The notes under the pieces were generated by a model. That model searched no databases and was not told the origin of the DNA. It saw nothing but the letters and a program-made list of their open reading frames with translations. A stretch of 64,000 nt of DNA from Oopsacas minuta (taxonomy: Eukaryota; Animalia; Porifera). The position numbers and the translations under genes are program-made. How positions within the stretch are numbered: the stretch's first letter is position 1; every line of letters starts with the position of its first letter. The stretch is taken from positions 1 through 64,000 of the forward strand of contig JAKMXF010000333.1 in NCBI GenBank assembly GCA_024704765.1. Direction: 5' to 3'. This document shows positions 5,946-56,191 of this stretch, in pieces.

Positions 5946-6457
5946 AATTTGCCAGTTGTGGCCATTGTACAGACCTTCCCTTATTTGACATATGGACCGT
6001 ATTTCTCAGGCAAAGAGTTAGAAAGTACCTTATTAATCTAAATAACTACAATCAATTTTAGAAATCCAGGGAATCCGAGAAATGTATCCAAGGAAATAGT
6101 TTCAAAGGGTTGGTAAGTATGCATTTCATTATGCCAAAATTCCAACGGATTCTTTAGAGGGAAGAGAACACTGTTGTTAGGCTCCCCACCTTGAATTGCC
6201 AAATTATGCAGGTTCTATTCTTTCTGCGTTCGCCCCTTTTGCAATTTCTCTTTGAAATTTTTGTGTAGTTTCATTCAAAATTGCATCCAGCCCATCTCAA
6301 TCCTAACTTCTGAAAATTCCCCACTTTAGGAGATTCAGTGGCTATTTGTTCCAAACACTTCCATTTACCAACCCCACTTGCAAGGTTCCACTGTTTTCGA
6401 GTACTTATATACGTATATTCGGTAGACAACAATATCATTAGTAGCTAATAATCTCAG

Positions 6458-7720
6458 ATGGCTACTTCGATAACTACTACAGGATTAAACTATGAAGAGA
6501 AGCCTTTCCTATCACAATTGGCTGTTGCTAAATCCGAACTGAATGAGAAAATAATGGCAGCTGAGGAGTCTGTAGCTGAGAGATTAAGAGAGAGAGTACT
6601 ACAGCTACACTCTGAGTTTAAGAGGATAGAGGACGAATATAATTGTAAAGAAGTTACTGATGAGATAGCAAAATTAGAAGCTGAGAAAGGAGAAATTAGA
6701 TTCAAAGATCCTGAAGAAGGATTCATGAGAAGGGAATTAAAACGGATCGATCTCCGTATAAACGAGCTGGAAACAATGATGGAGAAATCCCAAGCAAAGT
6801 TTAGGAGAGTTGAGTTTGAGTGGGACGAACTTCCCCTTGAAAATATACATTGTAAAGTAGGATCAATTCGAGTCAGTGCTGTACCTAACTATAAGCAATT
6901 ATCTGATCCAGTGAAGTATGCTGGTACACACAGTTACAACTCTCCAGATTCTCAAGAATTCAGATGTCCTCGTTCCTTAGGTATTGACCCGGAAACGAAT
7001 AATATTTATATTTGTGACACTGGAAACAATCGAGTTCAAGTTTACAACGAATCTTTAAAGTTCATTCGTGATATCAGTGACAAGATGAAAGGCCCAGCTT
7101 ATATATGCATACAGCTTAACAAGGTATATGTTACACAGACAGATGTTAATAGCCTCAATGTATATCATACTGACGGTGCATTATCTCATACTGTCGGAAG
7201 TAAAGGAAAGAAAGAGCTAGAATTTGATGATCCTAGAGGAGTTGTTGTTTCAATTGAGAAAGATCTTATCTACATTTGTGACTGGTCCAACAATCGCATA
7301 CAATGTTTGAATCTACAGGACTATAGCTTCAAATCATTAATTAGTGATGTTTGTCACCCAAAGGAAATCAAACTAACTTCACAGGAAGTAGTAGTGTTAA
7401 TGGAGGGAGAGAAGTGTATCAGATTTTATAATTATTCTCATCAGCTGATTCGAGACATTATCACCTATGGAGAAGATAATCAAGTTGGACTTTCAAGTCA
7501 TTTCTGTATCGACTTAGATTCCAATATTTTGATAACAGACCATTCAGATTTTTGTCATTGTGTTCTGATATTTTCCAGCTCAGAAAAACTTATACACAAG
7601 ATTGGAGAATATGGAGAAGATCGCGGCCAATTTAAAGAACCAAAAGGTATTGCAATAGACAGAAACGGTAGAATAATTGTGGTATCTCATAACATGTATC
7701 AGTGTATTCAGATATTTTGA
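6458..7720 (+). CDS. Coiled-coil + NHL-repeat (beta-propeller) protein, TRIM-NHL-like but without RING/B-box
   Basis: Open 420-aa single-exon ORF. Charged coiled-coil N-terminus; NHL repeats FRCPRSLGID...IYICDTGNNRVQV, FDDPRGVVV...ICDWSNNRIQ and FKEPKGIAID. Confidence 0.9.
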   Translation: MATSITTTGLNYEEKPFLSQLAVAKSELNEKIMAAEESVAERLRERVLQLHSEFKRIEDEYNCKEVTDEIAKLEAEKGEIRFKDPEEGFMRRELKRIDLRINELETMMEKSQAKFRRVEFEWDELPLENIHCKVGSIRVSAVPNYKQLSDPVKYAGTHSYNSPDSQEFRCPRSLGIDPETNNIYICDTGNNRVQVYNESLKFIRDISDKMKGPAYICIQLNKVYVTQTDVNSLNVYHTDGALSHTVGSKGKKELEFDDPRGVVVSIEKDLIYICDWSNNRIQCLNLQDYSFKSLISDVCHPKEIKLTSQEVVVLMEGEKCIRFYNYSHQLIRDIITYGEDNQVGLSSHFCIDLDSNILITDHSDFCHCVLIFSSSEKLIHKIGEYGEDRGQFKEPKGIAIDRNGRIIVVSHNMYQCIQIF

Positions 7721-43572: not shown

Positions 43573-44724
43573 TTGGTTATTTTAGTAGATTCGTTTCCTC
43601 TAACTTGAGTTAGCTATAGATTCTAGAGCATTCTACTTATAGTTATCTTTACGTATCTAGCTTGTGTTTAGTTACTGGTTTGTATATATACTCTAATTCA
43701 ATATTATAATAGGTATTGTTGTTCTCAAATTATCCCTTAAAACTTCGTTCACTCTCTCAACACACAGTGTAATAACTAACAAGTAAGTTGAATCCTAACT
43801 TCGTTTTTACTTTGCCGACTATACTATAGTGGGCCAGTACTGAAATGTTTATTATATTTCTCTGTTTGTTATACATAAACCCCGACCTATTACTCTCATG
43901 TACTGGTCATATAGACAAGTAATGATAATATTTTCTATGAACAATATGGCCCTAACATAACATTGAGTGGATAATTCGCATAATTTACAAGAATATTTTG
44001 AATTTATAAACTTAGTAATACAAGAAATTGCTACAAATGCTGGGCCACCATTTGGTGGGTCACTTTGAGCGTATGCTGTTATGTTAGCCAAACTATAATA
44101 GATTAAGTGCTGAAACTTTCAATATAAAAGACAATTACCGTTGTGTGTGCATAAAAAGCTTTTGTTCTGCCACTTTTGTGTCACTTTTACACTTTCCAAA
44201 CATAGAGATTGTAGTAGTATTATTTTTACTATTGGCTACTAGGAGCAAAATTGTAATGTAGAGGTTATATTCAGTAATTAATAATAATACTACCATCGTA
44301 TATTAATATTATTAATTAAGCTTAGTGTACATTGGTTAGAGTCTTTAGACAATATGGAAAAATAAATATCGACACAATAGACTCAATTCCTCTGACGTCA
44401 TTAACTACATAAAACTTGAAACGGGAATGACTCAATAACGATAGCAGCTAGTGTAATGTACTCGAACCTCTCTTATCAGGACCTCCGAGATACGGGCAGC
44501 TCTTTCAACCAGGTACCATTTTTCCAGAAGGATTGAAATTACTGACCATTTTATAATAGAGCTGTCTTACTTGTACTTCATATCAACACGTTTCTGTACA
44601 TGCAATAGCCTGTGGGCTATAGTACGTAATATTGCAGCCTTAATTTCAAGGGACAGCTCAAACTTTTCGTAACAATATGGAAAGGCGAGGGAAGTGTATG
44701 CAAAGTATGAGCCCCATTCCTTTT

Positions 44725-46048
44725 GGGTCTAGCACATTTGCGTACATCACACTTGCGTACAGTATGTTATTATTTGTTGAATTCAAACAAATTCATATAT
44801 ATATTTAATGATTAGGCCATGTAAAATAAAGTACTTGTTTCTCATCCACTTTTTTCTGCGAAATAGGGGCGGAAGGCGGCATTTTATTTTTATTTTTTTT
44901 TGCATAGCGTAATTTTACTAATTTATTTAAACTATCTCGTTAATACGAATTTCTGATAAGACGAACAATATTCGTACATAATCAGGTCCCTACAACCATA
45001 CTTCAATGGATATTACTCCGGTTTATGAGCTCCAGAAAGGTGAATAAATTTTAACCGTACGGTCCATTGGTGTTCGTATTAAGCTTACACTGTATATGGG
45101 AAAACGCGATTAATCTATAATTGTATATAATAATAATGATAAAAATAATAATAATAAAAATTTAGTGCACACCCCAGGGCTGATTTTTGCCATGCAGGGA
45201 GGGGTATTTAGGCCTGACTCGGACAGGTCTGAGTCTTGGACGAAAATTCACACCTGACGAAATTATGATGCCATTGCCACCTTTTTGTGCCATCGGCTAG
45301 CCAGATCTTTGACATGGTCAAAAATTCTATGTTCTCTTTATTTGCAAATATCACTATCCTATCGGGGCCAATGCCAGAGTCGTAGAATAGAAAATTCCTG
45401 TTAGAAAATGTCTTGATGTTTTCAGCGTCTAACTGAAGTTCTTCAAGAGATACTGGATTAGGTGGAGCAACACGTTGCCTTTTATACATCATTTTCAGGG
45501 CGTGTTGATTTGGAAGCAGAGACTTCGCAGATTCAGACAATAAACTGGTCATCTCTCCTATCGCAACGTGTGGATTGTCATTAGTTTCTCTCCCTCGCTT
45601 CCTCAATAAATCTTTCATGACTGTTACCTCATCTTTACCGTATTCCTGTGGGTGAGAATGTTTCCCAGACTTTTTGATGATTGTCTCATCAACGGAGTGT
45701 ATTCTAGCTTTACATCCTCGCACGTCACACCGCCACTCCTTTTTGATAGCTCCCCGATGGAAAATATACAAATATCCGTCGTAGGATAATTTGTTAGTCC
45801 CCTTTGAAGATTTGACTATTTGGAATGAAGTATCGCTATTGGCAGACATTAGATACTTGGTGATAAAATATCCAGCTCATCCAATGCATTTTATAGATCT
45901 CGAAATAATTTTGTAATTAGAGTTTATTTATCTGTGAAACCTTTAATTAACTTGTCAAATATACATTACATTGTACACAACTGTGATGTACGCAACTGTG
46001 AACATAAACATTGTACGCAAGTGTGATGTACGCAAATGTGCGGCTCCC
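44725..46048 (-). mobile_element. Mutator/MULE element with truncated FLYWCH-transposase
   Basis: TIRs GGG....GCACATTTGCGTACATCACACTTGCGTACA; 9-bp TSD ATTCCTTTT at 44716-24 and 46049-57. ORF 45208-45849 has YDGYLY..W.CDVRGCKAR...HSH and WLADGT (first catalytic D), then is cut by another repeat (also seen at about 26580). Confidence 0.9.
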
Positions 46049-46511
46049 ATTCCTTTTGTATTACAAAAGAGTCAAAATACCTAACATAGGGAGGGATTTT
46101 GCGTTACGTTGATATATGAAATGATAAAGAATATGGGCGGGCATGCCCACCCATATTTTGAACATAGCCTTACATCATCCTAAATTAAATCCTGCATTGG
46201 TCCGGCTCTATTATTAGCTGTTCTCAGGATTAATTAAGTCATCTGATTGTCTGATAAATAATTCATAAATTTTCAATCTCCTCTCTATTTTATTCACTCT
46301 TCTTTCTGATATTACAATATAGAATTTAGTGTACAGTAAACATTGGATTTAACGACAAATTTTTCTTGCCCAGTAATACCCAGCAGTATATGAAACTACA
46401 TCGGATTAGCAATCAATCGGATAATTCTACCTTTTTAGTCTACCAAAATGAGTGTCGCTAAATCCAATCTTTTCTATATTTTCATCTTTTAATCTACTCT
46501 AGGAAATTTCT

Positions 46512-49500
46512 ATGAAGTTGACGATACTTCTCGCTTACTACCTTATTTTGCCGGTCATTTACCTTGTAAGTTAGACTGTTAGATTATACTATGTGTACCG
46601 TATTCCTCTGAATAGTAGCCTCCTGAGCTGAGGGGTCCTAAAATCTAGAACTGCCGGTTGCTATATTGAATGATTACTGCCCGTATATTTACTTATATGC
46701 TGTTGCTCAGAATAAATTCATGGTAATAACAATGGGTATGATTATATAGAGATTTACGTGTTAATAATCGCCCCAGCTATTATTCAAGAAAATACTGTTT
46801 ATGCAATTCAGAGTAGTTATGAGCCTTGAACTGTCTGACGGATTAATCGTAGGTCCGTGGAAGCATAACCTATGACACAATGAATTATTGAGAAGTTAAC
46901 TGATTAACCCATCGTGTACGTCTAATCGGGTAATTGAGACTATATTTATTCATAGTAGAGACTCCAAAGTACTTACAAAAGTGCCTGAAGCAATTCGATC
47001 TCAGTTAGTTACTATGTCAAATATGCACTTGTAGCAGTTAGATGTGTATTGTAACTGGATCTTAGATCTATATTCCAAATGGGTCACGGAACCGTTACCC
47101 CCTGAGTCGGACCCTGCCCCATCTGACCCAACAGCTCATTGGCTCATGCATACTTACATTGCCTCCCGGGATTATTCCTACATTTGACAAAATCCTGCGG
47201 AGAATTTGAGAATCCAGGTTTAGTAACTTTGTCCTTTCCCCAAATAATAGCCTGAAATTGCTATGATTTATAAAATCCAGAGAATCTTTCGAAAATTCAG
47301 TGAAATTATTGTAAGGGGTTATTAAGTATACCACTCATGGCATACAATATACAAGGTTGGACAAAATATCAAAAATATCGGAAAATAATTTTCAATATTG
47401 ATTTCCGATATTTATCGAATCGGGGAATTTTCTGATCGTATCGTATCTGAGATTTTTAACCGCTGTCGATATTTGCCAAGCCTTGTAATAAATATTACAT
47501 AAGCATATGCTTCATCGTACTACCGCCCCTACCTCCTAGAGACGGCCCTGTCCATAATTAAGATTCGTTATTTATTTACTGTACTCTCACAGAAAGGAAC
47601 AAGTGGGACTGGAAAACTCACTATCAATTACATAGACTTCGATACAAAGGGAAGAGATATTGATGGTGCATATTGCGACCTCGGTTTATTTTATTACAAC
47701 GCATGTGGTCCACTTTTCAAAATTTGTCTAAGATATGGACACAGCACTTCTACATTTGATTGTAACTCAGGGTCATCAACCTTCTCCGAGATCATCACAG
47801 ATTATTATACAGACACAGATTTTGTGACATTTGGTACATCTCTCGGTGAAGTAACTAACCCTGTCGAGTATTCAACAGAAAACTCATTCGATGTAAGTTG
47901 AATGAAATTCAATAAACTGACATTATTTAGTTATGTTCTATATCTGATTAACAGGACTGTCAGCTACATATAGTATGTCACACAGACACAGGTATGCTTG
48001 CCAGCTGTCTCGCATAGAGCTAGAAGTCCAGCTCTTTCGGGCATTTGTTGAGTGATAATTAAATCGGAATAGTCCAGTTATGGTAGCCAGACATACTATT
48101 ATACAATTATTTTAAAATCTAGCAGCCCGATTAACATGAAAATTGGTATACATATACATTTTGGGTTGGACATTTGCACCTCGGGTATAAATTTTTCTAA
48201 AGTGAAATTTTAGTCGATTAATCATATTTTCACACCTTTTGCATATATTCGAAATGATGCTTCAGATTACGTTTCAAAAGTTAGACAAGGGGTAATTGCA
48301 GGATAATTATTCGGAATCTTAACCATAGGATTTGAGGATAAAACATGAAGTACAGTAGAGGATTATTACTATTGAGTATCATGATAGTAAACACAGCTTG
48401 GTATTGTATTTAACCCAGTGTTGCAGCGGTCCGTGAATTTCATGGACGGTGGACCGGTCCAGACCGATAGCATAAACCTAGTCAATTCATGTTCAGCCAC
48501 CCTAAAGCTACCCCAGTATTTGGTTGAAAGGAAATTTTTGGATTATTTAGAAAATAGTACACAGCAACAAATATTCACATTACATAGTTGAAATATCTTA
48601 TTCGAATTCAGCATACTCGATTACCCAACGTAATGGTTTACTTTTCCTATATCGTCACCAGAAGGATATGTTATTTCCTATATTTAATAAATATACACAG
48701 ATCGTCTTCCCCTATTATTATAATTCAAAGTACGTAGACAAACAAACAAACAAAAAGCAAATACACTCTCAGAATAATTGAGTTTTGATACTTAGTGATT
48801 ATTTTCTATTTAGGGAAATTTTGAAATTTCAATTGTTGCAATTGATACAGATGGATTCTGGAATGGAGGAGATGACGACATAGATCACATAATTATTAGA
48901 ATTTCAGCTATAAAGCAAGCAAATTTCGGTTCTACTTTAACCTACGAAGGATTACGTCAATCATTCAAGACTACAGCTAGTCTTCAGTACAAGTTTACAT
49001 GTGATGATAACTACTATTCTACTTTTTGTACAGTGTATTGTATAGCTGAAGATAGTACAAGTGGTCACTACACTTGTAACTCTGTAACAGGTGGAAAAAT
49101 TTGTAATACAGGCTATAGCGGAACAAATTGTGATGTCGGTGAGATTTTACGTTTTCCTATACTTATTTCGTGTTTCATTACTGTCTACTCCCGTCATATT
49201 GAACACATATATCCAAATATACTCCCTTAAATCGATTTCTGAAATTATACAAATATGGTCCCAAACTGTAAAAAGTAACATAAATTTCTCTCGTTATATA
49301 CAACTCCGCTATATCGTAGAAATTATCGCATTCCCTTGAACTTCTATATAACGTCACCTGAATGTAGTACTGCTATTGTTTGGCGTACAATATCCGATTG
49401 TTTTTCTTCTGAATACCATCCTTATCGATGTATAAATGTAAAATGCAAAGTTCTCAGAGCGAGAAGGCAAACCCACATCAGCTGCCATAAGATTGAATTT

Positions 49501-52500
49501 GATAACTTCTAGCAATTGTACAATGACATGGTCAGAGGTATGGATAGTATAAATTCAGAATTATAATAATTATATTCTTCAGGATCATGTTCCGAGGGAT
49601 TTGAATGGAACAAAGCTAATCACAGTTGTATAGACGTTAATGAGTGTACTCAATACAAAGATCAATGTACCCAGATCTGCAAAAATACTGTTGGAAGCTA
49701 CGAGTGTTCTTGCATGACTAATTACTACTTAGCTACATATACCGCTTGCAGCATTATAACGTTTGACACATTAATAGCAGTTTATGGACTGACTAGCAGA
49801 TCTATACATATCAATTGGCAAACGACTTTCACTCCAATCACACACTCTTTCTCTCTCTATTATGTGGTGTATTATCGTGACATTACATCCTTTGCATCCT
49901 CGTATATATATTACGAAAATACAACTGCTCTACAATATACTATCACCAATCTACTACCTTACAGAAACTATCAGCTGTATGTCAGTTCTATAGGAAGTCT
50001 ATCTAGTGGAAAATCCAATACTGTTATAGTGAGAACAAATCAAGACATACCGAGTCAGTCTCCAACTAGTGTCACAATCTTAACAGTCAGTGATACAGAG
50101 ATCAGTTTCTCGTGGTTCGCTCCTAGCAGGGAATCTCAAAATGGTATTATAATTGATTACGTCATTGTAATCAACAATACAGAACACACTGTGAGCGGTT
50201 CTTCTACTTTCTACAAAATTACAAATTTGAAACCACACAAAGTGTACACACTCAGTGTAGCAGCTGCTACCTCTGTTGGGATAGGACCTTACAGTTCTTT
50301 CATCACTATCACCACCCATGAGAGCTTTCCCACATCTACTCCTCTCCTCTCTGTCACTACCATCACTCACACTACAATGACACTCACACTATTCCCTCCT
50401 ACTGATATAGATACTCTCAATGGTGTCATCATCTACTATACTGTCACATACACAGGTATCAGTGTAGACACGTCTACACTGACTGTCAGGGTTACTCCAT
50501 CCACTACAGACTATTTGTCACCTGTTGATGAGACACTGGTTGGATTGCAAGAAGGTGTCTCCTACAACATTCAAGCAGCTGTGAGTACGAGTGTTGGAAG
50601 TGGTCCTTACACTGATGTCATCACTCAGATGACACACGAGATAGCTCCTACTGACACACCTCAGAATATCCAATTTACTACCATCCTAACTACCAGTCTG
50701 TCTCTCAGCTGGGACTCTCCTCCTCTGAGTGAGCAGAACGGAATTATAACAGGTTATCGGTTAGCAAATAGGGGAGTTAGTATTGATACTGAATGGAGAA
50801 ATACAACTCTGGCAACAAATAGTGCTACTTTAGAGAATCTGAGTGAAGGTAGCAAGTATATTATCTACATCTGTGCAGCGAATAGTATGGGAGAGGGTCC
50901 TTGTATTTCCGTCACTGAGACTACTTTAGAAATTCTACCTGATGGCGCTCCAACAATGTTTGTGGTTGAAAACCGAGCTTCTAATTCTCTTTCATTTTCA
51001 TGGACACTCCCTCTTATCGTAGAACGAAACGGAGTAATAATAGCGTTCCACTTGGTAGCAACTGATCTTCAAACTAACATAGAAATCTCTCAAGCTGAGG
51101 TCAGTGGAACAACATTTTTCTATCAGTTCACAGATTTGGAAGAACATCATGAATATTCTATCAAAATTCAAGCAAGAAATTCAATTGGGTACGGACCAGA
51201 TGCTGAGTTAATTGTGTCAACTTCTGAATCATCTCCTGGAGAAGCTCCAGCCAATTTTACCGGTATTCCCACAACTGTTAGTATTACACTATCATGGGAA
51301 GCTATATCCGTTGATCAACAGAATGGAGAGTTGACTTTCTACGAAATTACGTATTTTAACGCAGCAACATTCCTACTACACACTCACGTTGGTACGAACA
51401 TATCCTCATCAGAACTAGAGTATACTATTTATGGCCTGGAAGAAGATGTAGTCTACCATTTCAGAATTAGAGTATATACTTCTGTGGGAGCAGGTCCCTA
51501 CTCCAACGAAATTAGTGTCAGAACTCAAGAAGCTCTACCCTCTAGTCCACCCACAGAGTTCAAGGCGTTTGTGTTGTCAACTACAGAAATACAAGTAGAA
51601 TATGATTATCCTCTCGTTATTAATCAGAATGGAGCAATAACAGGATTTGATATTAGTGTAACTTCTTCAACAGAATCTATTGAGCAGATAATATCGACAT
51701 ATCTGACAAGTTACACTATACACTCTCTCCATCCTTACAGTAGTTATTCCATCCAGGTCAGAGCTATCAATTCTATTGGACATAGTCCTTATACTCCAGT
51801 TATCATAATTACAACCAACCAAGCACTACCAGCCGAAGCACCTACACATCTTACTCTCTTACTGATCACACCTAATTCTGTCAACCTCTCTTGGGATCAG
51901 ATCCCTCCCTCTTCCCTGAATGGAGAGTTTGTAAGCTACAGTGTTCTCGTAACTGCTACTCAAACAACAATTTCCTTCTTATACGCCTCCATCTCACCTC
52001 AGGCTATTATCGCTAGCCTCACCCCCTACACAGAGTACTCACTAGCAGTAGCAGTTGTTAATACTCATGGAACAGGTCCCTACTCATCCTCTGATGTCAC
52101 TTTCACTACTCTTCAGTCACCTCCCTCACAAGGACCTGAACTACTTCCCATTCAAAACATAACTAACACTAGCGCCCTTGTACAGTTTAATTCTCTTCCT
52201 ATACACCTCCAAAATGGACCTATTATCTCCTACACACTCTCTCTCTATGCCAGTGCAGACAATCTCCTTGTTACTTCAATCACCCTCTCCTCTCTCTCAC
52301 ACAACTTATCGACTCTACTTCCATACAGAGAGTACACCGTACAGTTAACAGCTAGCAACTTAGCTGGTACCAGTTCTCCTACTTCTACGAGCTTTATGAC
52401 AGCAGAATATGTACCCACTGGTCCCCCCACCTCTATCTCTGCCACTCCTTACTCCACTTATGTCACTCTGCTATACCAGCCTCCTGAAGCTTCTGAACAA

Positions 52501-55386
52501 AACGGGATCATAATTTATTACTCAATTAAATTTGGTACTTCTATCAGCACAACTATCTACACTACACACATGACAGAATATTCAGTCTATGATCTAGAGG
52601 AATTCACTCAGTATCAATTTAGTATTACTGCCTGGACCAGTATCGGTATAGGACCCTACAGTTCAGAACTCTATGTATCAACTCTTCCATTCCCTCCGTC
52701 TGCAGCGCCACAGAATGTGACGGGTACACCTCAATCTTATCATTCTATATTTGTTAGTTGGTATCATATTCCTGCTATCCATCAGAATAGCCTTATAATC
52801 AGTTACATTGTCTACTATCAAGAACAAGAACATGACACTAGTGAGGGAAAGCGAACAGTTGATGCTTTCAAAACTGATACCATAATCACACCCCTGAAGC
52901 CTGATGAGGTGTACTCTATCATTGTAGCAGCTGTTAATTCTGGAGGTATTGGTCCTCTATCTGTTCCAATTTATGTCAGAACACTACAAGGATTGCCAAC
53001 TGCTGCTCCTACTCAGGTAATAGTTGTATCTACGTCATCATCTTCATACATAGTCAGCTGGATTGGAATTCTTGCACAGCATCACAATGGATTGCTATTA
53101 TCTTATGAAATTGTGTCTCAAGGTGCAAACTATGACATGTCTCCATTGAGAATAAAAACTGGTTTGAATACGACATCATTAGTAGTGACTGGTTTGCATC
53201 CAGCAGTAGAATACACTGTGTATGTGTTTGCATCGAATGCAATTGGAAACGGTCCTGCTTCTGATTCAGCCTCTCTCTTGTTGCCAGAATCAACTCCTAA
53301 TGTAGCTCCTTCAATTATAGATTCTTCTTCAGGGAAAAATTGGATATTCGTGGTTTGGGAAGAAATTGACGGAATAGATCGTAATGGACTTATTCTACTA
53401 TATGAACTTAGATTCACGCCATCATCAGATACCCAATTCGTATTCATTAATATCAGTGCACCTACTATTAACTCAAATCTAACAGGTTTAAACATTGATA
53501 CGTATTATGCAATAGAAATACGAGCTTATACCAGTGCAGGTCCTGGACCATTCTCTTCAGAACAATTCTTATCAACAGATAATCATGTCTGTATAGTGTG
53601 TGTGAATGGTGAGTGTTCTCAAGATTATGCTGAGAGCATCTGTCAGTGCAATCCAGGTTTCACAGGTCAAACTTGTGATATCAACATTGATGACTGTCTT
53701 GATGTTAACTGTGATCATGGTAGTTGTACAGATGGAGTTAATAAATATATTTGTGAATGTGATGACGGGTATCAAGGACAGCTGTGTGACATAACAACTG
53801 GTACACCTGTCTGTGGAGAAGTGCTTTATCTCAACTTCCTATGGCTTGATACAGCTTATAGTGATACAGTTGTTCTTCCTTGTTCTGATTCTGACTCTCT
53901 ACTATTCGGTGATGCCAGTCGTTCCTGCTCAGCTGATGGCTCATGGTTGCCACCTAATGTGAATAATTGTATGAAGAAAGTTTATAATGATCTGGATATA
54001 GAAGGTGATTTAATACTCTCTCCTGAAGATGTTATTGATAGCGTTGCTAATCTGCAGAATATTTTCTGTGTAGTTGATTCGGGGTCTGGCCCCACTTTCT
54101 TCCCAAGTGAGATCGAGATATTGATTGAAGTTATAGTGAATGTTCTGGATTCAGTAGACAGTCAGAATGAATCTACTCGAGTAGACCTTCTTCCTCAGAT
54201 GATGCCTGGGGTTCTGTGCATGTTTTCTGGCATACTCGACTCGAGGAATCTTGAGTTGTTTCATCTCTCTACTGACTCTGTACTAGCTATTGAAATATAC
54301 GAGCTGATAGAGAGAATTGCTAAGTTAAATGCAGAGAATTACGACACCACTAATTCTGACTTCACACTCTTCTCAAAAGAAAATATTCATATGTACATTA
54401 CTCCTCTGACTGATGGACAATCCGTCACACTACCAGATTACGATCTGTCAGCTGTCAAAGATACAGGTCTCTATCCAAGCAGTATATCAATCCCTGGGAG
54501 TGAGGTATCGAATCTATTCTCCAAATCCAATGGAGTAGTGCCTGTAATTGCTGTTGTGTTTAGTCGCTATTTGGGTCAAGCAATCGGCACTTCTTCTTTA
54601 AACACTGATCTAGATACTACTACCATCAGCACAGGTGTAATTTCTGTACAGAATAGCCTGGGAGAACCTCTCACATTCTCTTCTCCCATTACTCTAACTC
54701 TAAAACTACTCAATTCTGCAGAATCTAAACTAAAATATACTTGTGTGTATTGGGATAATACTACACAGGCTTGGACTTCCTCTGGACTAAGCTATGCTGG
54801 AGAAAGTTCAGAATATTTCAGCTGTTTCAGCACACATGCTACTAGCTTTTCTGTACTTTCATTCAAATATGAGGGTCCCAATGATCAAATTATCATTACA
54901 GGTTCTATTAGTGCAATTTTATGCCTTCTGGTTGTATTCGTCTCTTGCTCTATATGGTTCCTTTACAATTATTTCAAGAGGAAAGATTTTAAGTTTATTG
55001 ATTTGCAAAGACAGTCAGAAACAGTGGGCCATCCGCTACAGTCAGATGATGCTTCCTTTAATCCATTATATGATCACAATAAAGACAAATTGGACATGAT
55101 ATATCAAACAGAACAAGAAAAATCTAAGAATTATTCAATTATTGATATCGAACATCACGAAGATAGACAAAATGCAGAAATAAAATCCAAACCCTCTACG
55201 GAGCCATTCGCTGAAGATATTGAGATTGACAACAAGGAGGTAGATGACCCTTCAATGTCTGAATCGAATGCATTTAAAACAGATTCTGACAACCTAACTG
55301 AAAATTTCTATGATTGCATAGCTTCTGAGGATGTACAGCCTGGTTCTTCAGTTCATTCTGAAGATGAACACAGTGATGATATATAA
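46512..55386 (+). CDS. 4-exon, about 2160-aa single-pass receptor: SP-MNNL(C2)-DSL-cbEGF-13xFN3-2xEGF-HRM-GAIN/GPS-TM-NPxY tail
   Basis: Exons 46512-46565, 47593-47892, 48814-49138 and 49583-55386; GT-AG introns, phases 0/0/1, 6483 nt open. DSL CDDNYYSTFCTVYCIAEDSTSGHYTCNSVTGGKICNTGYSGTNC; cbEGF DVNEC; HRM C..W..T....VLPC...RSC..DGSW....NC; GPS CVYWD...W...G...CFSTHATSFSVL; one TM; FNPLY. Confidence 0.88.
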
Positions 55387-56191
55387 TTAGCCAATATTCC
55401 AATATTCTAAAATATTTGATAATATGAATTATTTATTTACATTCTTTAGTTTTATATCATAATTTTTAAATTTTAATTTTTGTAGAATTTTTAGTTTTAG
55501 TTACTATTCATTTGTATCTAATTTTATGTTAATTAACATGAATTTAAGAAACGTCCATTTACAAATCGAAATACACTCTATCACTCTATCTCGATTATTC
55601 GAATTCGTTGGGCCTGTCAAGAACGTTCTGATAATCGAGGTTGCACTGTAGTTATACTGTAACATCAAACAGTTTTAGCACTGTTACTGTTCTCTTCGGA
55701 TAACCCTGCTATCGTATACCCCATTGTTGGATGCCATGCGACCTTCGTCAGCTAATTTTTCCTAAGTATAAAACAGAAACTGTGCAACCTTTAGGTTGCT
55801 CTTAAGTATATCAGAAATTTTTAGTACAGCAGCTATAGGGAGATGCCCCTAATGGCATGGACAATGTGCGACGTCCATACAGATGTCCGTCCGTTAGCGG
55901 TCGTGCGAAATCTAGGTACACATACATTTTGGGGCCGGAGATTTGCAACTCGGGGATGAATAGTTCTAAAGTGAATATTTCACACTCTCTATGTAAAATA
56001 CAAAATCAAGCTAGAGATTAGGTTTCAACATGTTGTCAGGGGTAATTGGGTGCGTAGAGTCCGTATTTGAGATTTTCAGAGTTTTAAAGTTACAAATTCA
56101 CAGATTTATCATATGTTTCACACCTTTTTGCATATTTTTCAAAATCATGCTAGAGATTTCTTTTAAAAGCTATTCAGGGGCAGTCCAGTAT

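What the first reader, a model, noticed from the sequence alone, without database searches (positions are those of the whole stretch)
46512..55386. Delta/DSL Notch-ligand head fused to an adhesion-GPCR GAIN stalk with only one TM helix
Seen: four phase-consistent exons give one ORF running from a signal peptide (MKLTILLAYYLILPVIYL, an 18-codon exon with a GTAAGT donor) through a Delta-type MNNL/C2 domain, a DSL domain with the full cysteine pattern, cbEGF, 13 FN3, 2 EGF, HRM and GAIN/GPS to a single TM and an acidic tail. The ORF track shows only the last exon, so the DSL part is hidden. Known: DSL + MNNL binds Notch, and Notch activation needs pulling force from ligand endocytosis; GAIN domains self-cleave and come apart under force in adhesion GPCRs and polycystin-1. 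I know of no described protein combining them. Inference: a very long Notch ligand with a built-in force-release or shedding module, so the ligand could set a tension threshold, detach as a soluble Delta, or signal back into its own cell.
Basis: partly seen in the sequence, partly recalled or inferred. Interest (0 to 1): 0.93.

Follow-up and report, generated by a model that had tools for sequence, protein, structure and literature searches.

The report
Delta-headed, GAIN-stalked single-pass sponge protein
A transcribed glass-sponge gene joins the Notch-binding head of Delta to the long stalk and GAIN domain of an adhesion GPCR, held in the membrane by one helix; relatives in other assemblies keep all seven helices, so this is an undescribed natural link between two force-sensitive signalling systems.

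Summary
The window is from Oopsacas minuta, a hexactinellid sponge. All three splice joints appear in RNA-like contigs, and the transcript ends just after the stop.

The head is a true C2/MNNL-DSL module. It matches DLL1 at E 1.6e-17, and the best 24 fold matches are all Notch ligands. The stalk is cbEGF, 13 FN3, 2 EGF, HormR and GAIN/GPS; the best fold matches are BAI3, latrophilin and CELSR1. There is one TM helix and no 7tm_2 sequence in the window.

New here: it belongs to a family. Oopsacas has two more paralogs, and three other assemblies have the same exon structure. Three loci in a fourth assembly place the same signal-peptide, C2 and DSL exons in front of genuine 7TM adhesion GPCRs. 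The single-TM form therefore looks like a 7TM-less derivative that kept TM1 and the receptor's NPxY/NPF tail.

Notch binding and GPS cleavage (the site is H-A|T, with one disulfide lost) are untested. No paper describing the combination was found. The scan noted the same architecture on another piece of this genome (s1-266701).

The parts
43718..43782 (+). Non-coding 5' exon (true start not determined), donor gtaagt after 43782, spliced to 46503
   Evidence: A loose end of 65 letters in an X4 contig lies before 46503. There is an exact match at 43753-43782, and a gtaagt donor follows.
46503..46565 (+). Exon with the start codon (46512). It encodes an 18-codon signal peptide and has a GTAAGT donor.
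   Evidence: There is an in-frame TAA in the upstream exon. The same exon structure is seen in P0002, P0003 and L006.
47593..47892 (+). Exon encoding the first 100 residues of the C2/MNNL domain (aa 19-118)
   Evidence: phmmer against fly Delta and DLL1; AF2 plus Foldseek; joints in X4 contigs.
48814..49138 (+). Exon encoding the end of the C2 domain plus the DSL domain (six Cys, aa 181-224, nt 49000-49131). It ends in phase 1 at C-D-V-G|gt.
   Evidence: Pfam DSL E 3e-11 and 43.7 bits against a cut-off of 24.2; coordinates.
49583..49752 (+). Partial EGF-like module plus one calcium-binding EGF (aa 227-283)
   Evidence: Pfam EGF_CA 1e-8; cEGF is weak.
49753..53583 (+). Thirteen fibronectin type III domains (aa 284-1560)
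   Evidence: Pfam fn3 E 7e-128 with 13 stretches.
53584..53799 (+). Two EGF domains (aa 1561-1632)
   Evidence: Pfam hEGF, EGF and EGF_Teneurin.
53800..54003 (+). HormR (HRM) domain (aa about 1633-1700)
   Evidence: Pfam HRM 2.8e-4, below cut-off. Foldseek matches BAI3 and latrophilin HormR-GAIN. The family profile matches ADGRL3 from HormR onward.
54004..54867 (+). GAIN domain, subdomains A and B, with the GPS motif. The site H-A|T is at nt 54835-54843. A Stachel-like T-S-F-S-V-L follows. Only two of the four canonical GPS cysteines are present.
   Evidence: Pfam GPS 4e-8 and GAIN 1e-4. AF2 pLDDT 79; Foldseek 4dlo E 2.4e-18. Alignment A1; coordinates.
54889..54975 (+). The single transmembrane helix (aa 1996-2024). 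It aligns with TM1 of the 7TM relatives.
   Evidence: Hydropathy scan; alignment A1; helix in the model.
54976..55386 (+). Cytoplasmic tail of about 136 aa plus the stop codon. NPLY lies at 55060-55071. Two degenerate NPF sites (EPF at 55201, NAF at 55267) and an acidic C-terminus ...SDDI follow.
   Evidence: The tail motif is shared with 7TM paralogs. The transcript ends near 55415.

Best explanation
This is a real, expressed gene of the glass sponge Oopsacas minuta. It encodes a type I membrane protein. A Delta/Jagged-type C2-DSL head sits on a very long stalk (cbEGF, 13 FN3, 2 EGF), followed by a HormR-GAIN module, one TM helix and an NPxY-bearing tail.

Shown: it is one of three Oopsacas paralogs. 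It belongs to a family whose other members in related assemblies carry the same signal-peptide, C2 and DSL exons in front of full 7TM adhesion GPCRs. Its TM helix aligns with their TM1, and its tail shares motifs with their C-terminal tails.

Inferred: it arose from a Delta-headed adhesion GPCR by loss of TM2-7. It therefore works without G proteins, through its ectodomain, as a non-canonical DSL ligand or adhesion molecule. It would hold a Notch-binding-type head roughly 60 nm from the membrane (my estimate from standard domain sizes) towards Notch or another EGF-repeat partner on an apposed surface. The GAIN domain would be a joint that either self-cleaves and can part under load, releasing the head-plus-stalk fragment, or stays intact as a rigid base. 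The NPxY tail would couple the protein to endocytic adaptors, which is the usual source of pulling force for DSL ligands.
For: The gene model equals public protein P0001. All splice joints are seen in RNA-like contigs and the transcript ends after the stop.

Head: DLL1 E 1.6e-17 and fly Delta 1.9e-16 across C2+DSL. The AF2 model has pLDDT 90, and its first 24 PDB matches are all Notch-ligand C2-DSL.

Stalk base: the fold matches BAI3, BAI2, latrophilin and CELSR1 HormR-GAIN at E 1e-17 to 1e-18. The family profile hits ADGRL3 from HormR into TM1 at 5e-19.

One TM only, and no 7tm_2-like sequence in the window.

Conservation: paralogs P0002 and P0003 have identical exon borders. C2 and DSL exons lie directly upstream of the big exon in L001, L002 and L003.

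7TM relatives with the same head exons: L006 and two loci in L010. The head HMM gives E 1e-7 to 4e-7 for the C2 exons and 5e-24 to 7e-24 for the DSL exons.

The tree places the single-TM proteins inside 7TM clades. The tail block DNPYxEI..ANPFTE is shared by a single-TM and a 7TM member; NPLY and NPF motifs are also present in the Oopsacas 7TM paralog P0301.

Purifying selection on the head (dN/dS 0.36) is like that on the rest of the ectodomain (0.34).

Oopsacas has Notch and its processing machinery (PMC5684314). [quoted passage not shown]
Against: No binding or cleavage data exist.

The Phe before G-H in the DSL domain is present in the vertebrate and fly ligands aligned here and, from my memory of the published mutagenesis (not checked here), is needed for Notch binding. 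It is Ser in this protein and in P0002, and Ser or Thr in the L001-L003 copies. Only P0003 keeps it. That position is also variable in many invertebrate Delta-like heads, so the test is inconclusive.

Canonical ligands follow the DSL with a run of EGF repeats. Here there is one cbEGF and then FN3.

The GPS has Ala at P-1 where the consensus is Leu/Ile (PMC13197933), and the second GPS disulfide is lost across the whole family, so self-cleavage is uncertain.

Ectodomain dN/dS of about 0.35 is only moderate constraint. In this copy the tail evolves at dN/dS about 1.3 and both NPF motifs are degenerate.

Head-to-7TM linkage in L006 and L010 rests on exon order, phase and conservation, not on RNA. 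The species behind the ENA assemblies are not named by the tools.
Confidence: 0.55

Rival explanations
1. It is an adhesion or matrix-contact protein whose head does not engage Notch. The C2-DSL module would be a tip that binds lipid or some other partner. The FN3 stalk and GAIN would serve mechanical attachment, much as in other FN3-rich surface proteins.
For: The DSL face departs from the vertebrate and fly ligands. There is no EGF run after the DSL. Many animals have non-canonical multi-DSL proteins without the Delta layout. The published canonical Delta already accounts for a Notch ligand in glass sponges (PMC5684314). The nearest full-length sequence relatives outside the family are FN3 adhesion proteins such as sidekick, PTPRQ and usherin.
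Against: The whole C2-DSL unit, not just a cysteine pattern, is kept with the Notch-ligand fold. It is conserved across the family under purifying selection. The only proteins found with this two-domain unit are Delta/Jagged-type proteins.
Confidence: 0.28
2. It is a cis-acting modulator or decoy of Notch signalling. Head and GAIN would associate within one chain or on one membrane, as LAT-1 and LAG-2 do. The protein would then tune the availability of Notch or of the canonical Delta rather than send a signal itself.
For: LAT-1 GAIN and RBL bind the DSL ligand in cis and act without the 7TM domain (PMC12255766). A fusion of partners that interact elsewhere is a classic Rosetta-stone pattern. 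The tail of this copy is under relaxed constraint.
Against: Thirteen FN3 domains separate the head from the GAIN, which argues for reach rather than folding back. No RBL domain is present. There is no direct evidence.
Confidence: 0.1
3. It is a decaying duplicate. The window copy would be a recent paralog losing function, and only P0003 or the 7TM members would be the working genes.
For: Tail and TM dN/dS are 1.1-1.3 against P0002. Both NPF motifs are lost here but kept in P0002. The DSL Phe is kept only in P0003.
Against: The 6.5-kb ORF is intact. It is spliced and transcribed at depths like the rest of the gene. Ectodomain dN/dS is 0.34-0.36, well below 1.
Confidence: 0.05
4. It is a gene-model artefact: a small Delta-like gene and a separate FN3-GAIN gene wrongly joined.
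For: The head exons are separated from the big exon by introns of 0.4-1 kb. ORF-only gene calls in other assemblies list them as separate products.
Against: Contigs in X4 join exon 3 to exon 4 at 49138/49583. The phase-1 border C-x-[VI]-G|gt is conserved in all paralogs and in the other assemblies. The DSL exon has no stop or TM of its own, and the big exon has no signal peptide.
Confidence: 0.02

Closest known systems
DSL Notch ligands (Delta, DLL1/DLL4, Jagged/Serrate), including the canonical glass-sponge Delta (OmDelta)
   Same: N-terminal signal peptide, C2/MNNL domain and six-cysteine DSL domain with the same fold. Type I single-pass topology.
   Different: The run of 6-16 EGF repeats is replaced by one cbEGF, 13 FN3, 2 EGF, HormR and GAIN. 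The tail is of adhesion-GPCR origin. The Phe before G-H is Ser. The protein is about three times longer.
Adhesion GPCRs with a HormR-GAIN module (latrophilins ADGRL, BAI/ADGRB, CELSR/ADGRC)
   Same: HormR-GAIN fold, GPS motif with His at P-2 and Thr at P+1, and a Stachel-like T-x-F-x-V-L. A long adhesive N-terminus with EGF_CA and FN3. TM1 and the tail are homologous to those of 7TM family members.
   Different: No TM2-7, so it cannot be a GPCR. P-1 is Ala, and one GPS disulfide is missing. A DSL head is not among the N-terminal domains listed for sponge adhesion GPCRs (PMC4302439), and DSL, MNNL and Notch are not mentioned in the holozoan survey (PMC12716839).
LAT-1 (latrophilin) / LAG-2 (DSL ligand) partnership in C. 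elegans
   Same: It links an adhesion-GPCR GAIN-containing ectodomain with a DSL ligand on one cell, acting independently of the 7TM domain and G proteins (PMC12255766).
   Different: In the worm these are two proteins that bind non-covalently, and an RBL domain is involved. Here they form one polypeptide with no RBL domain.
GAIN-domain proteins that are not GPCRs (polycystin-1 / PKD1-like, sea-urchin REJ proteins)
   Same: A GAIN/GPS module next to the membrane on a protein without a 7TM receptor core (PMC13197933).
   Different: Those proteins carry REJ and PLAT modules and mostly 11 TM helices. None of these is present here, and the sequence affinity is to adhesion GPCRs.
PTPRQ (the name NCBI gives the protein)
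   Same: A long FN3 array and a single TM; 24-28% identity over the FN3 region.
   Different: No tyrosine-phosphatase domain (PF00102 is absent). PTPRQ has no DSL or GAIN. The name reflects FN3 similarity only.

Membership tests
DSL Notch ligands | N-terminal C2/MNNL domain | tested here: met
   The Pfam MNNL model gives no hit. phmmer aligns residues 5-228 of the head with fly Delta C2-DSL at 1.9e-16 and with DLL1 at 1.6e-17. The AF2 model (pLDDT 90) matches DLL4, Jagged and Delta C2-DSL first.
DSL Notch ligands | DSL domain with six conserved cysteines | tested here: met
   Pfam PF01414 scores 43.7 bits against a cut-off of 24.2. All six Cys align.
DSL Notch ligands | Tandem EGF repeats directly after the DSL domain | tested here: not met
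   Only a partial EGF-like module and one cbEGF are present, followed by 13 FN3.
DSL Notch ligands | Conserved Notch-contact face of the DSL (Phe before G-H, flanking Arg/Asp, as in DLL1, DLL4 and fly Delta) | tested here: inconclusive
   C-I-A-E-D-S-T-S-G-H here against C-R-P-R-D-D-x-F-G-H in DLL1 and fly Delta. P0003 keeps D-D-T-F-G-H. The position is variable in many invertebrate Delta-like heads.
DSL Notch ligands | Binds and trans-activates Notch | not testable with these tools
   Needs binding and reporter assays. Notch is reported in Oopsacas (PMC5684314).
Adhesion GPCRs | GAIN domain with GPS motif next to the membrane | tested here: met
   Pfam GPS 4e-8. Foldseek 4dlo, 8oek and 4dlq at E 1e-17 to 1e-18. 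The family profile hits CELSR1 and ADGRL3.
Adhesion GPCRs | Seven-transmembrane domain (7tm_2) | tested here: not met
   One TM helix only. There is no 7tm_2-like sequence in 64 kb. The transcript ends near 55415 without further joints. Relatives P0010, P0012-14 and P0301 do have 7tm_2.
Adhesion GPCRs | [quoted passage not shown] | tested here: inconclusive
   The site is H-A-T: His and Thr are present, but P-1 is Ala. Only two of the four Cys remain, and this holds across the whole family. Consensus taken from PMC13197933. Whether it cleaves needs experiment.
Polycystin-1 / REJ GAIN proteins | REJ and PLAT modules, with a polycystin-type multi-TM region | tested here: not met
   None appears in the Pfam scans.
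PTPRQ-type receptor phosphatases | Cytoplasmic protein-tyrosine-phosphatase domain | tested here: not met
   The tail is about 136 aa with no PF00102.

The most novel reading that the evidence does not exclude
Glass sponges have a family of Delta-headed GAIN proteins in which a Notch-ligand head is physically coupled to the mechanosensitive GAIN joint of adhesion GPCRs. The 7TM members would read engagement of Notch (or a Notch-like partner) as a G-protein signal in the ligand-bearing cell. The single-TM members, such as this gene, would be tension-gated or shed ligands. This would be a natural Rosetta-stone fusion showing that the Notch-ligand and adhesion-GPCR systems were functionally linked early in animal evolution, as the worm LAT-1/LAG-2 interaction hints.
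Probability: 0.25. Interest if true: 0.9.

Novelty: new variant of a known kind. Interest (0 to 1): 0.75.

Why it matters
Notch activation needs mechanical pull from the ligand cell, and adhesion GPCRs are activated when force acts on the GAIN domain. A natural protein that puts a Delta head on a GAIN stalk joins the two mechanisms in one chain, with and without the 7TM signalling core. That gives a directly testable model for force thresholds, ligand shedding and reverse signalling.

It revises the published view that glass sponges have a single Delta (PMC5684314, PMC10970066). It adds a DSL head to the known N-terminal repertoire of adhesion GPCRs. It also offers independent evolutionary support for the recently found latrophilin-DSL ligand interaction (PMC12255766).

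The setting is a largely syncytial animal that lacks Wnt ligands, so unusual juxtacrine signalling devices are of special interest there.

Tried and rejected
- The Pfam MNNL model gave no hit on exon 2 alone or on residues 1-300. I settled the C2 question with phmmer against PDB and with structure prediction.
- I looked for hidden 7TM exons by tblastn with three 7TM regions against the window. All hits had E > 0.09. There are no splice joints after exon 4. Rejected.
- I looked for the same architecture elsewhere. A word-based search over long proteins found only the three Oopsacas proteins with DSL+GPS. The ten long proteins I scanned from the 150 best head matches out of 1.84 billion representatives have DSL+EGF only. 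The ESM Atlas gave nothing above 0.68.
- I tested whether the 7TM subgroup P0010/P0301 has a head. tblastn, a cysteine-pattern scan and the head HMM were all negative. There is only a signal-peptide exon and an EGF-like exon ending C-N-T-G|gt.
- I tested whether the one-exon head ORF P0142 in L004 splices to the neighbouring HormR-GAIN-7TM gene. The phases do not fit directly (donor phase 1, nearest acceptor phase 0), so this is unresolved.
- I used the DSL Phe as a test of Notch binding and rejected it as decisive, because the position varies among invertebrate Delta-like heads.
- The species of the ENA assemblies could not be named. I only showed microsynteny with Oopsacas and 87-90% identity of a neighbouring DM10 protein.

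Full report
**What is there.** They give one 2160-codon ORF. That protein is identical, residue for residue, to a public protein of the glass sponge Oopsacas minuta (P0001). NCBI calls it 'PTPRQ-like isoform X2' and UniRef calls it 'Delta-like protein'.

**Transcript evidence.** Four public runs from one sample hold the region. Three are flat across introns and look like DNA. The fourth (X4) has exon depth of 170-600 against intron depth of about 5-7. Its contigs join 46565/47593, 47892/48814 and 49138/49583 exactly. An X4 contig also carries 65 letters before 46503. These match 43753-43782 in the window and are followed by a gtaagt donor. So there is a non-coding first exon, and its in-frame TAA fixes the ATG at 46512 as the start. 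Coverage runs through the 5.8-kb exon and stops near 55415. There are no joints in or after that exon.

**The head.** Pfam finds the DSL domain above its curated cut-off, but its MNNL model finds nothing. phmmer against all PDB chains aligns the region from residue 5 to 228 of the mature head with the fly Delta C2-DSL-EGF1 structure (1.9e-16). It also matches DLL1 (1.6e-17), DLL4, Serrate and Jagged. An AlphaFold2 model built on 100 aligned heads has pLDDT 90. Its first 24 Foldseek matches in the PDB are all C2-DSL parts of Notch ligands, and generic C2 domains come after them. The head is therefore a genuine Delta/Jagged-type C2-DSL unit.

Outside the family its closest relatives are Delta-like proteins of cnidarians, molluscs, a nemertean, a crinoid and the sponge Oscarella, at about 30-38% identity.

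The Phe before G-H is present in the vertebrate and fly ligands aligned here. From my memory of the published mutagenesis, which I did not check here, it is needed for Notch binding. It is Ser in this protein. Paralog P0003 keeps it. The position is variable in many invertebrate Delta-like heads, so it does not decide the question.

**The stalk and anchor.** After the DSL come a partial EGF-like module and one cbEGF, 13 FN3 domains and two EGFs. Next is a region that Pfam scores below threshold for HRM and GAIN but above threshold for GPS. An AlphaFold2 model of residues 1630-2030 (pLDDT 79) shows a HormR domain, a helical GAIN subdomain A, a beta-sandwich subdomain B and one long helix. It matches the HormR-GAIN crystal structures of BAI3, BAI2, latrophilin-1, CELSR1 and ADGRL3 at E 1e-15 to 1e-18. 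A profile of the family's HormR-GAIN-TM region hits CELSR1 (7e-20). It also hits ADGRL3 (5e-19) continuously from HormR into TM1.

The GPS reads C...W...W...C-x-S-x-H-A|T-S-F-S-V-L. His at P-2, Thr at P+1 and a Stachel-like strand are kept. P-1 is Ala where the consensus is Leu/Ile (PMC13197933). The second disulfide pair is missing in every family member. Whether it cleaves cannot be told from sequence.

A hydropathy scan finds only the signal peptide and one TM helix (aa 1996-2024). Relatives with a Pfam 7tm_2 domain show the expected multiple TM segments. No 7tm_2-like sequence exists anywhere in the 64 kb.

**It is a family, and some members are real GPCRs.** Oopsacas has two more proteins with the same architecture and identical exon borders: P0002 (87% identity) and P0003 (63%). 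In three other assemblies the homologous big exon is preceded, on the same strand and within about 1.3 kb, by a C2 exon and a DSL exon with the same borders (L001, L002, L003). L002 and L005 share microsynteny with Oopsacas, and their neighbouring DM10 protein is 87-90% identical.

More distant relatives (P0010, P0012-14 and Oopsacas P0301) have the same cbEGF/FN3/EGF/HormR/GAIN layout but carry a Pfam 7tm_2 domain. For the P0012-14 group, three loci in one assembly show the full head in front of the 7TM gene:
- At L006, an 17-codon signal-peptide exon with a GTAAGT donor.
- A C2 exon (head-HMM E 1e-7 to 4e-7).
- A DSL exon (E 5e-24 to 7e-24). At L006 it ends in phase 1 at C-N-V-G|gt, which would splice to give D-L-N-E-C at the start of the big exon.

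No RNA was available for these loci, so this linkage is inferred. The P0010/P0301 subgroup has no detectable head, only a signal-peptide exon and an EGF-like exon.

A maximum-likelihood tree of the HormR-GAIN region was rooted with unrelated sponge HormR-GAIN-7TM genes. It puts the headed 7TM group outside a clade that holds both the P0010/P0301 7TM pair and the single-TM proteins. The single TM aligns with TM1 of the 7TM members. The cytoplasmic tails share NPxY, NPF and acidic-end motifs, including a block D-N-P-Y-x-E-I...A-N-P-F-T-E (pairwise E 2e-5). The simplest history is a Delta-headed FN3-rich adhesion GPCR that lost TM2-7 in one lineage and lost the head in another.

**Selection.** Between the window gene and P0002, dN/dS is 0.36 for the head and 0.34 for the rest of the ectodomain. 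It is 1.1 for the TM and 1.3 for the tail. In this copy both NPF motifs have decayed (to EPF and NAF), while NPLY remains. So the ectodomain, head included, is under moderate purifying selection, and the tail of this copy is relaxed.

**How it most likely works.** The shown facts are a secreted-pathway type I protein, a Notch-ligand-type tip, a stalk of 13 FN3 and three and a half EGF-type modules, a GAIN base, one TM and an NPxY tail. I infer that it acts through its ectodomain, since there is no G-protein-coupling core. It would present the C2-DSL head far from the membrane, roughly 60 nm if extended (my estimate from usual FN3 and EGF sizes), to Notch or another EGF-repeat partner. Oopsacas has Notch and its proteases (PMC5684314). 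If the GAIN cleaves, it is a non-covalent joint that could part under the pull that ligand endocytosis exerts, which would cap the force or release the head fragment. If it does not cleave, it is a rigid membrane-proximal base. The NPxY tail offers the link to endocytic adaptors.

The worm finding lends plausibility to a functional coupling of the two modules. There, latrophilin's GAIN and RBL domains bind the DSL ligand LAG-2 in cis and boost Notch signalling without the 7TM domain (PMC12255766).

My confidence that the architecture and its derivation are right is about 0.9. My confidence that the head engages Notch is about 0.4. My confidence that the GAIN cleaves is about 0.5.

**Comparison with what is known.** It is not a canonical DSL ligand, because it has no EGF run and its tail is foreign to that family. 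It is not an adhesion GPCR, because it has no 7TM domain. It is not a polycystin/REJ protein and not PTPRQ.

Published work reports a single Delta in glass sponges (PMC5684314, PMC10970066). It lists EGF, FN3, Ig, SRCR and HRM, but no DSL, among sponge adhesion-GPCR N-terminal domains (PMC4302439). A 2025 survey that included the Oopsacas proteome does not mention DSL, MNNL or Notch (PMC12716839). The Oopsacas genome paper does not discuss the protein. No paper in the searchable library holds both 'DSL domain' and 'GAIN domain'.

The sequence is public, so the gene itself is not new. The architecture, its family and its 7TM relatives appear to be undescribed. Other first-stage notes of this scan flagged the same architecture on another piece of this genome (s1-266701), and Notch-ligand heads on adhesion GPCRs in Oopsacas (s1-266700, s1-235691). 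I could not inspect those pieces.

**Verdict.** This is a new variant that combines two known kinds. Interest is high because it is directly testable by heterologous expression.

Noticed in passing
window 45211-45849 (- strand): A 213-aa ORF with a FLYWCH zinc-finger domain (Pfam 1.2e-9) lies on the opposite strand inside intron 1 of the gene. It could be a nested gene or a transposon-derived piece.
   Followed up: partly
window 48008-48680 and 49214-49347: Stretches of introns 2 and 3 have 10-50 times the read depth of their surroundings in the DNA-like runs, with many loose ends. These are dispersed repeats inside the introns.
   Followed up: no
L007 3001-3255 (Oopsacas paralog P0002): The annotated P0002 has an 85-88-aa N-terminal extension from an exon 3.3 kb upstream. 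It joins at the acceptor that serves the 5'UTR exon in the window gene. By eye it looks like an integrase fragment, but it has no Pfam hit. The real start is probably the Met of M-K-L-T-I-L, so this looks like an annotation error.
   Followed up: partly
window gene against L007 (P0002), EGF-HormR-GAIN-A region (window about 53584-54350): Synonymous divergence between the two paralogs drops to 0.04-0.09 here, against about 0.2 in the head and FN3 region. This suggests gene conversion between the copies.
   Followed up: partly
L004 10001-10726: In another assembly a single exon encodes signal peptide, C2 and DSL (P0142, 51% identical to this head). Near-identical copies occur on four contigs. 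In L004 it sits between two tandem HormR-GAIN-7tm_2 genes. What it splices to is unresolved, because its donor is phase 1 and the nearest acceptor is phase 0.
   Followed up: partly
L009 4457-5593 and 8001-19077 (Oopsacas P0301): The annotated 3595-aa 7TM paralog starts without a signal peptide. A separate 182-aa 'gene' upstream has a signal peptide and an EGF-like exon ending C-N-T-G|gt. It is probably the true 5' end of P0301, which would place the DM10 gene (6064-7698, opposite strand) inside an intron.
   Followed up: partly
L008/L009, L002, L005: There is conserved microsynteny around family members across assemblies: DEAD_2 helicase, single-TM gene, tubulin-binding protein, 7TM paralog, DM10, Rad51, prenylcysteine lyase. 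In Oopsacas the single-TM P0003 and the 7TM P0301 lie tail to tail, with only the tubulin-binding gene between them.
   Followed up: partly
proteins P0155, P0144, P0174, P0180, P0198 (one search hits): Other animals have large non-canonical DSL proteins. One has 13 tandem DSL domains. Biomphalaria has proteins of 2.1-2.9 kaa with four DSL domains, a few EGFs and a long unannotated remainder. So the DSL module is used outside the classic Delta/Jagged layout.
   Followed up: no
C-termini of family members (P0001 ...SDDI, P0003 ...EDDV, P0301 ...NSDV, P0013 ...SSNV): Most family tails end in an acidic or Ser-containing tripeptide with a final Val or Ile. This resembles PDZ-binding motifs, which occur at the C-termini of both adhesion GPCRs and DSL ligands.
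   Followed up: no
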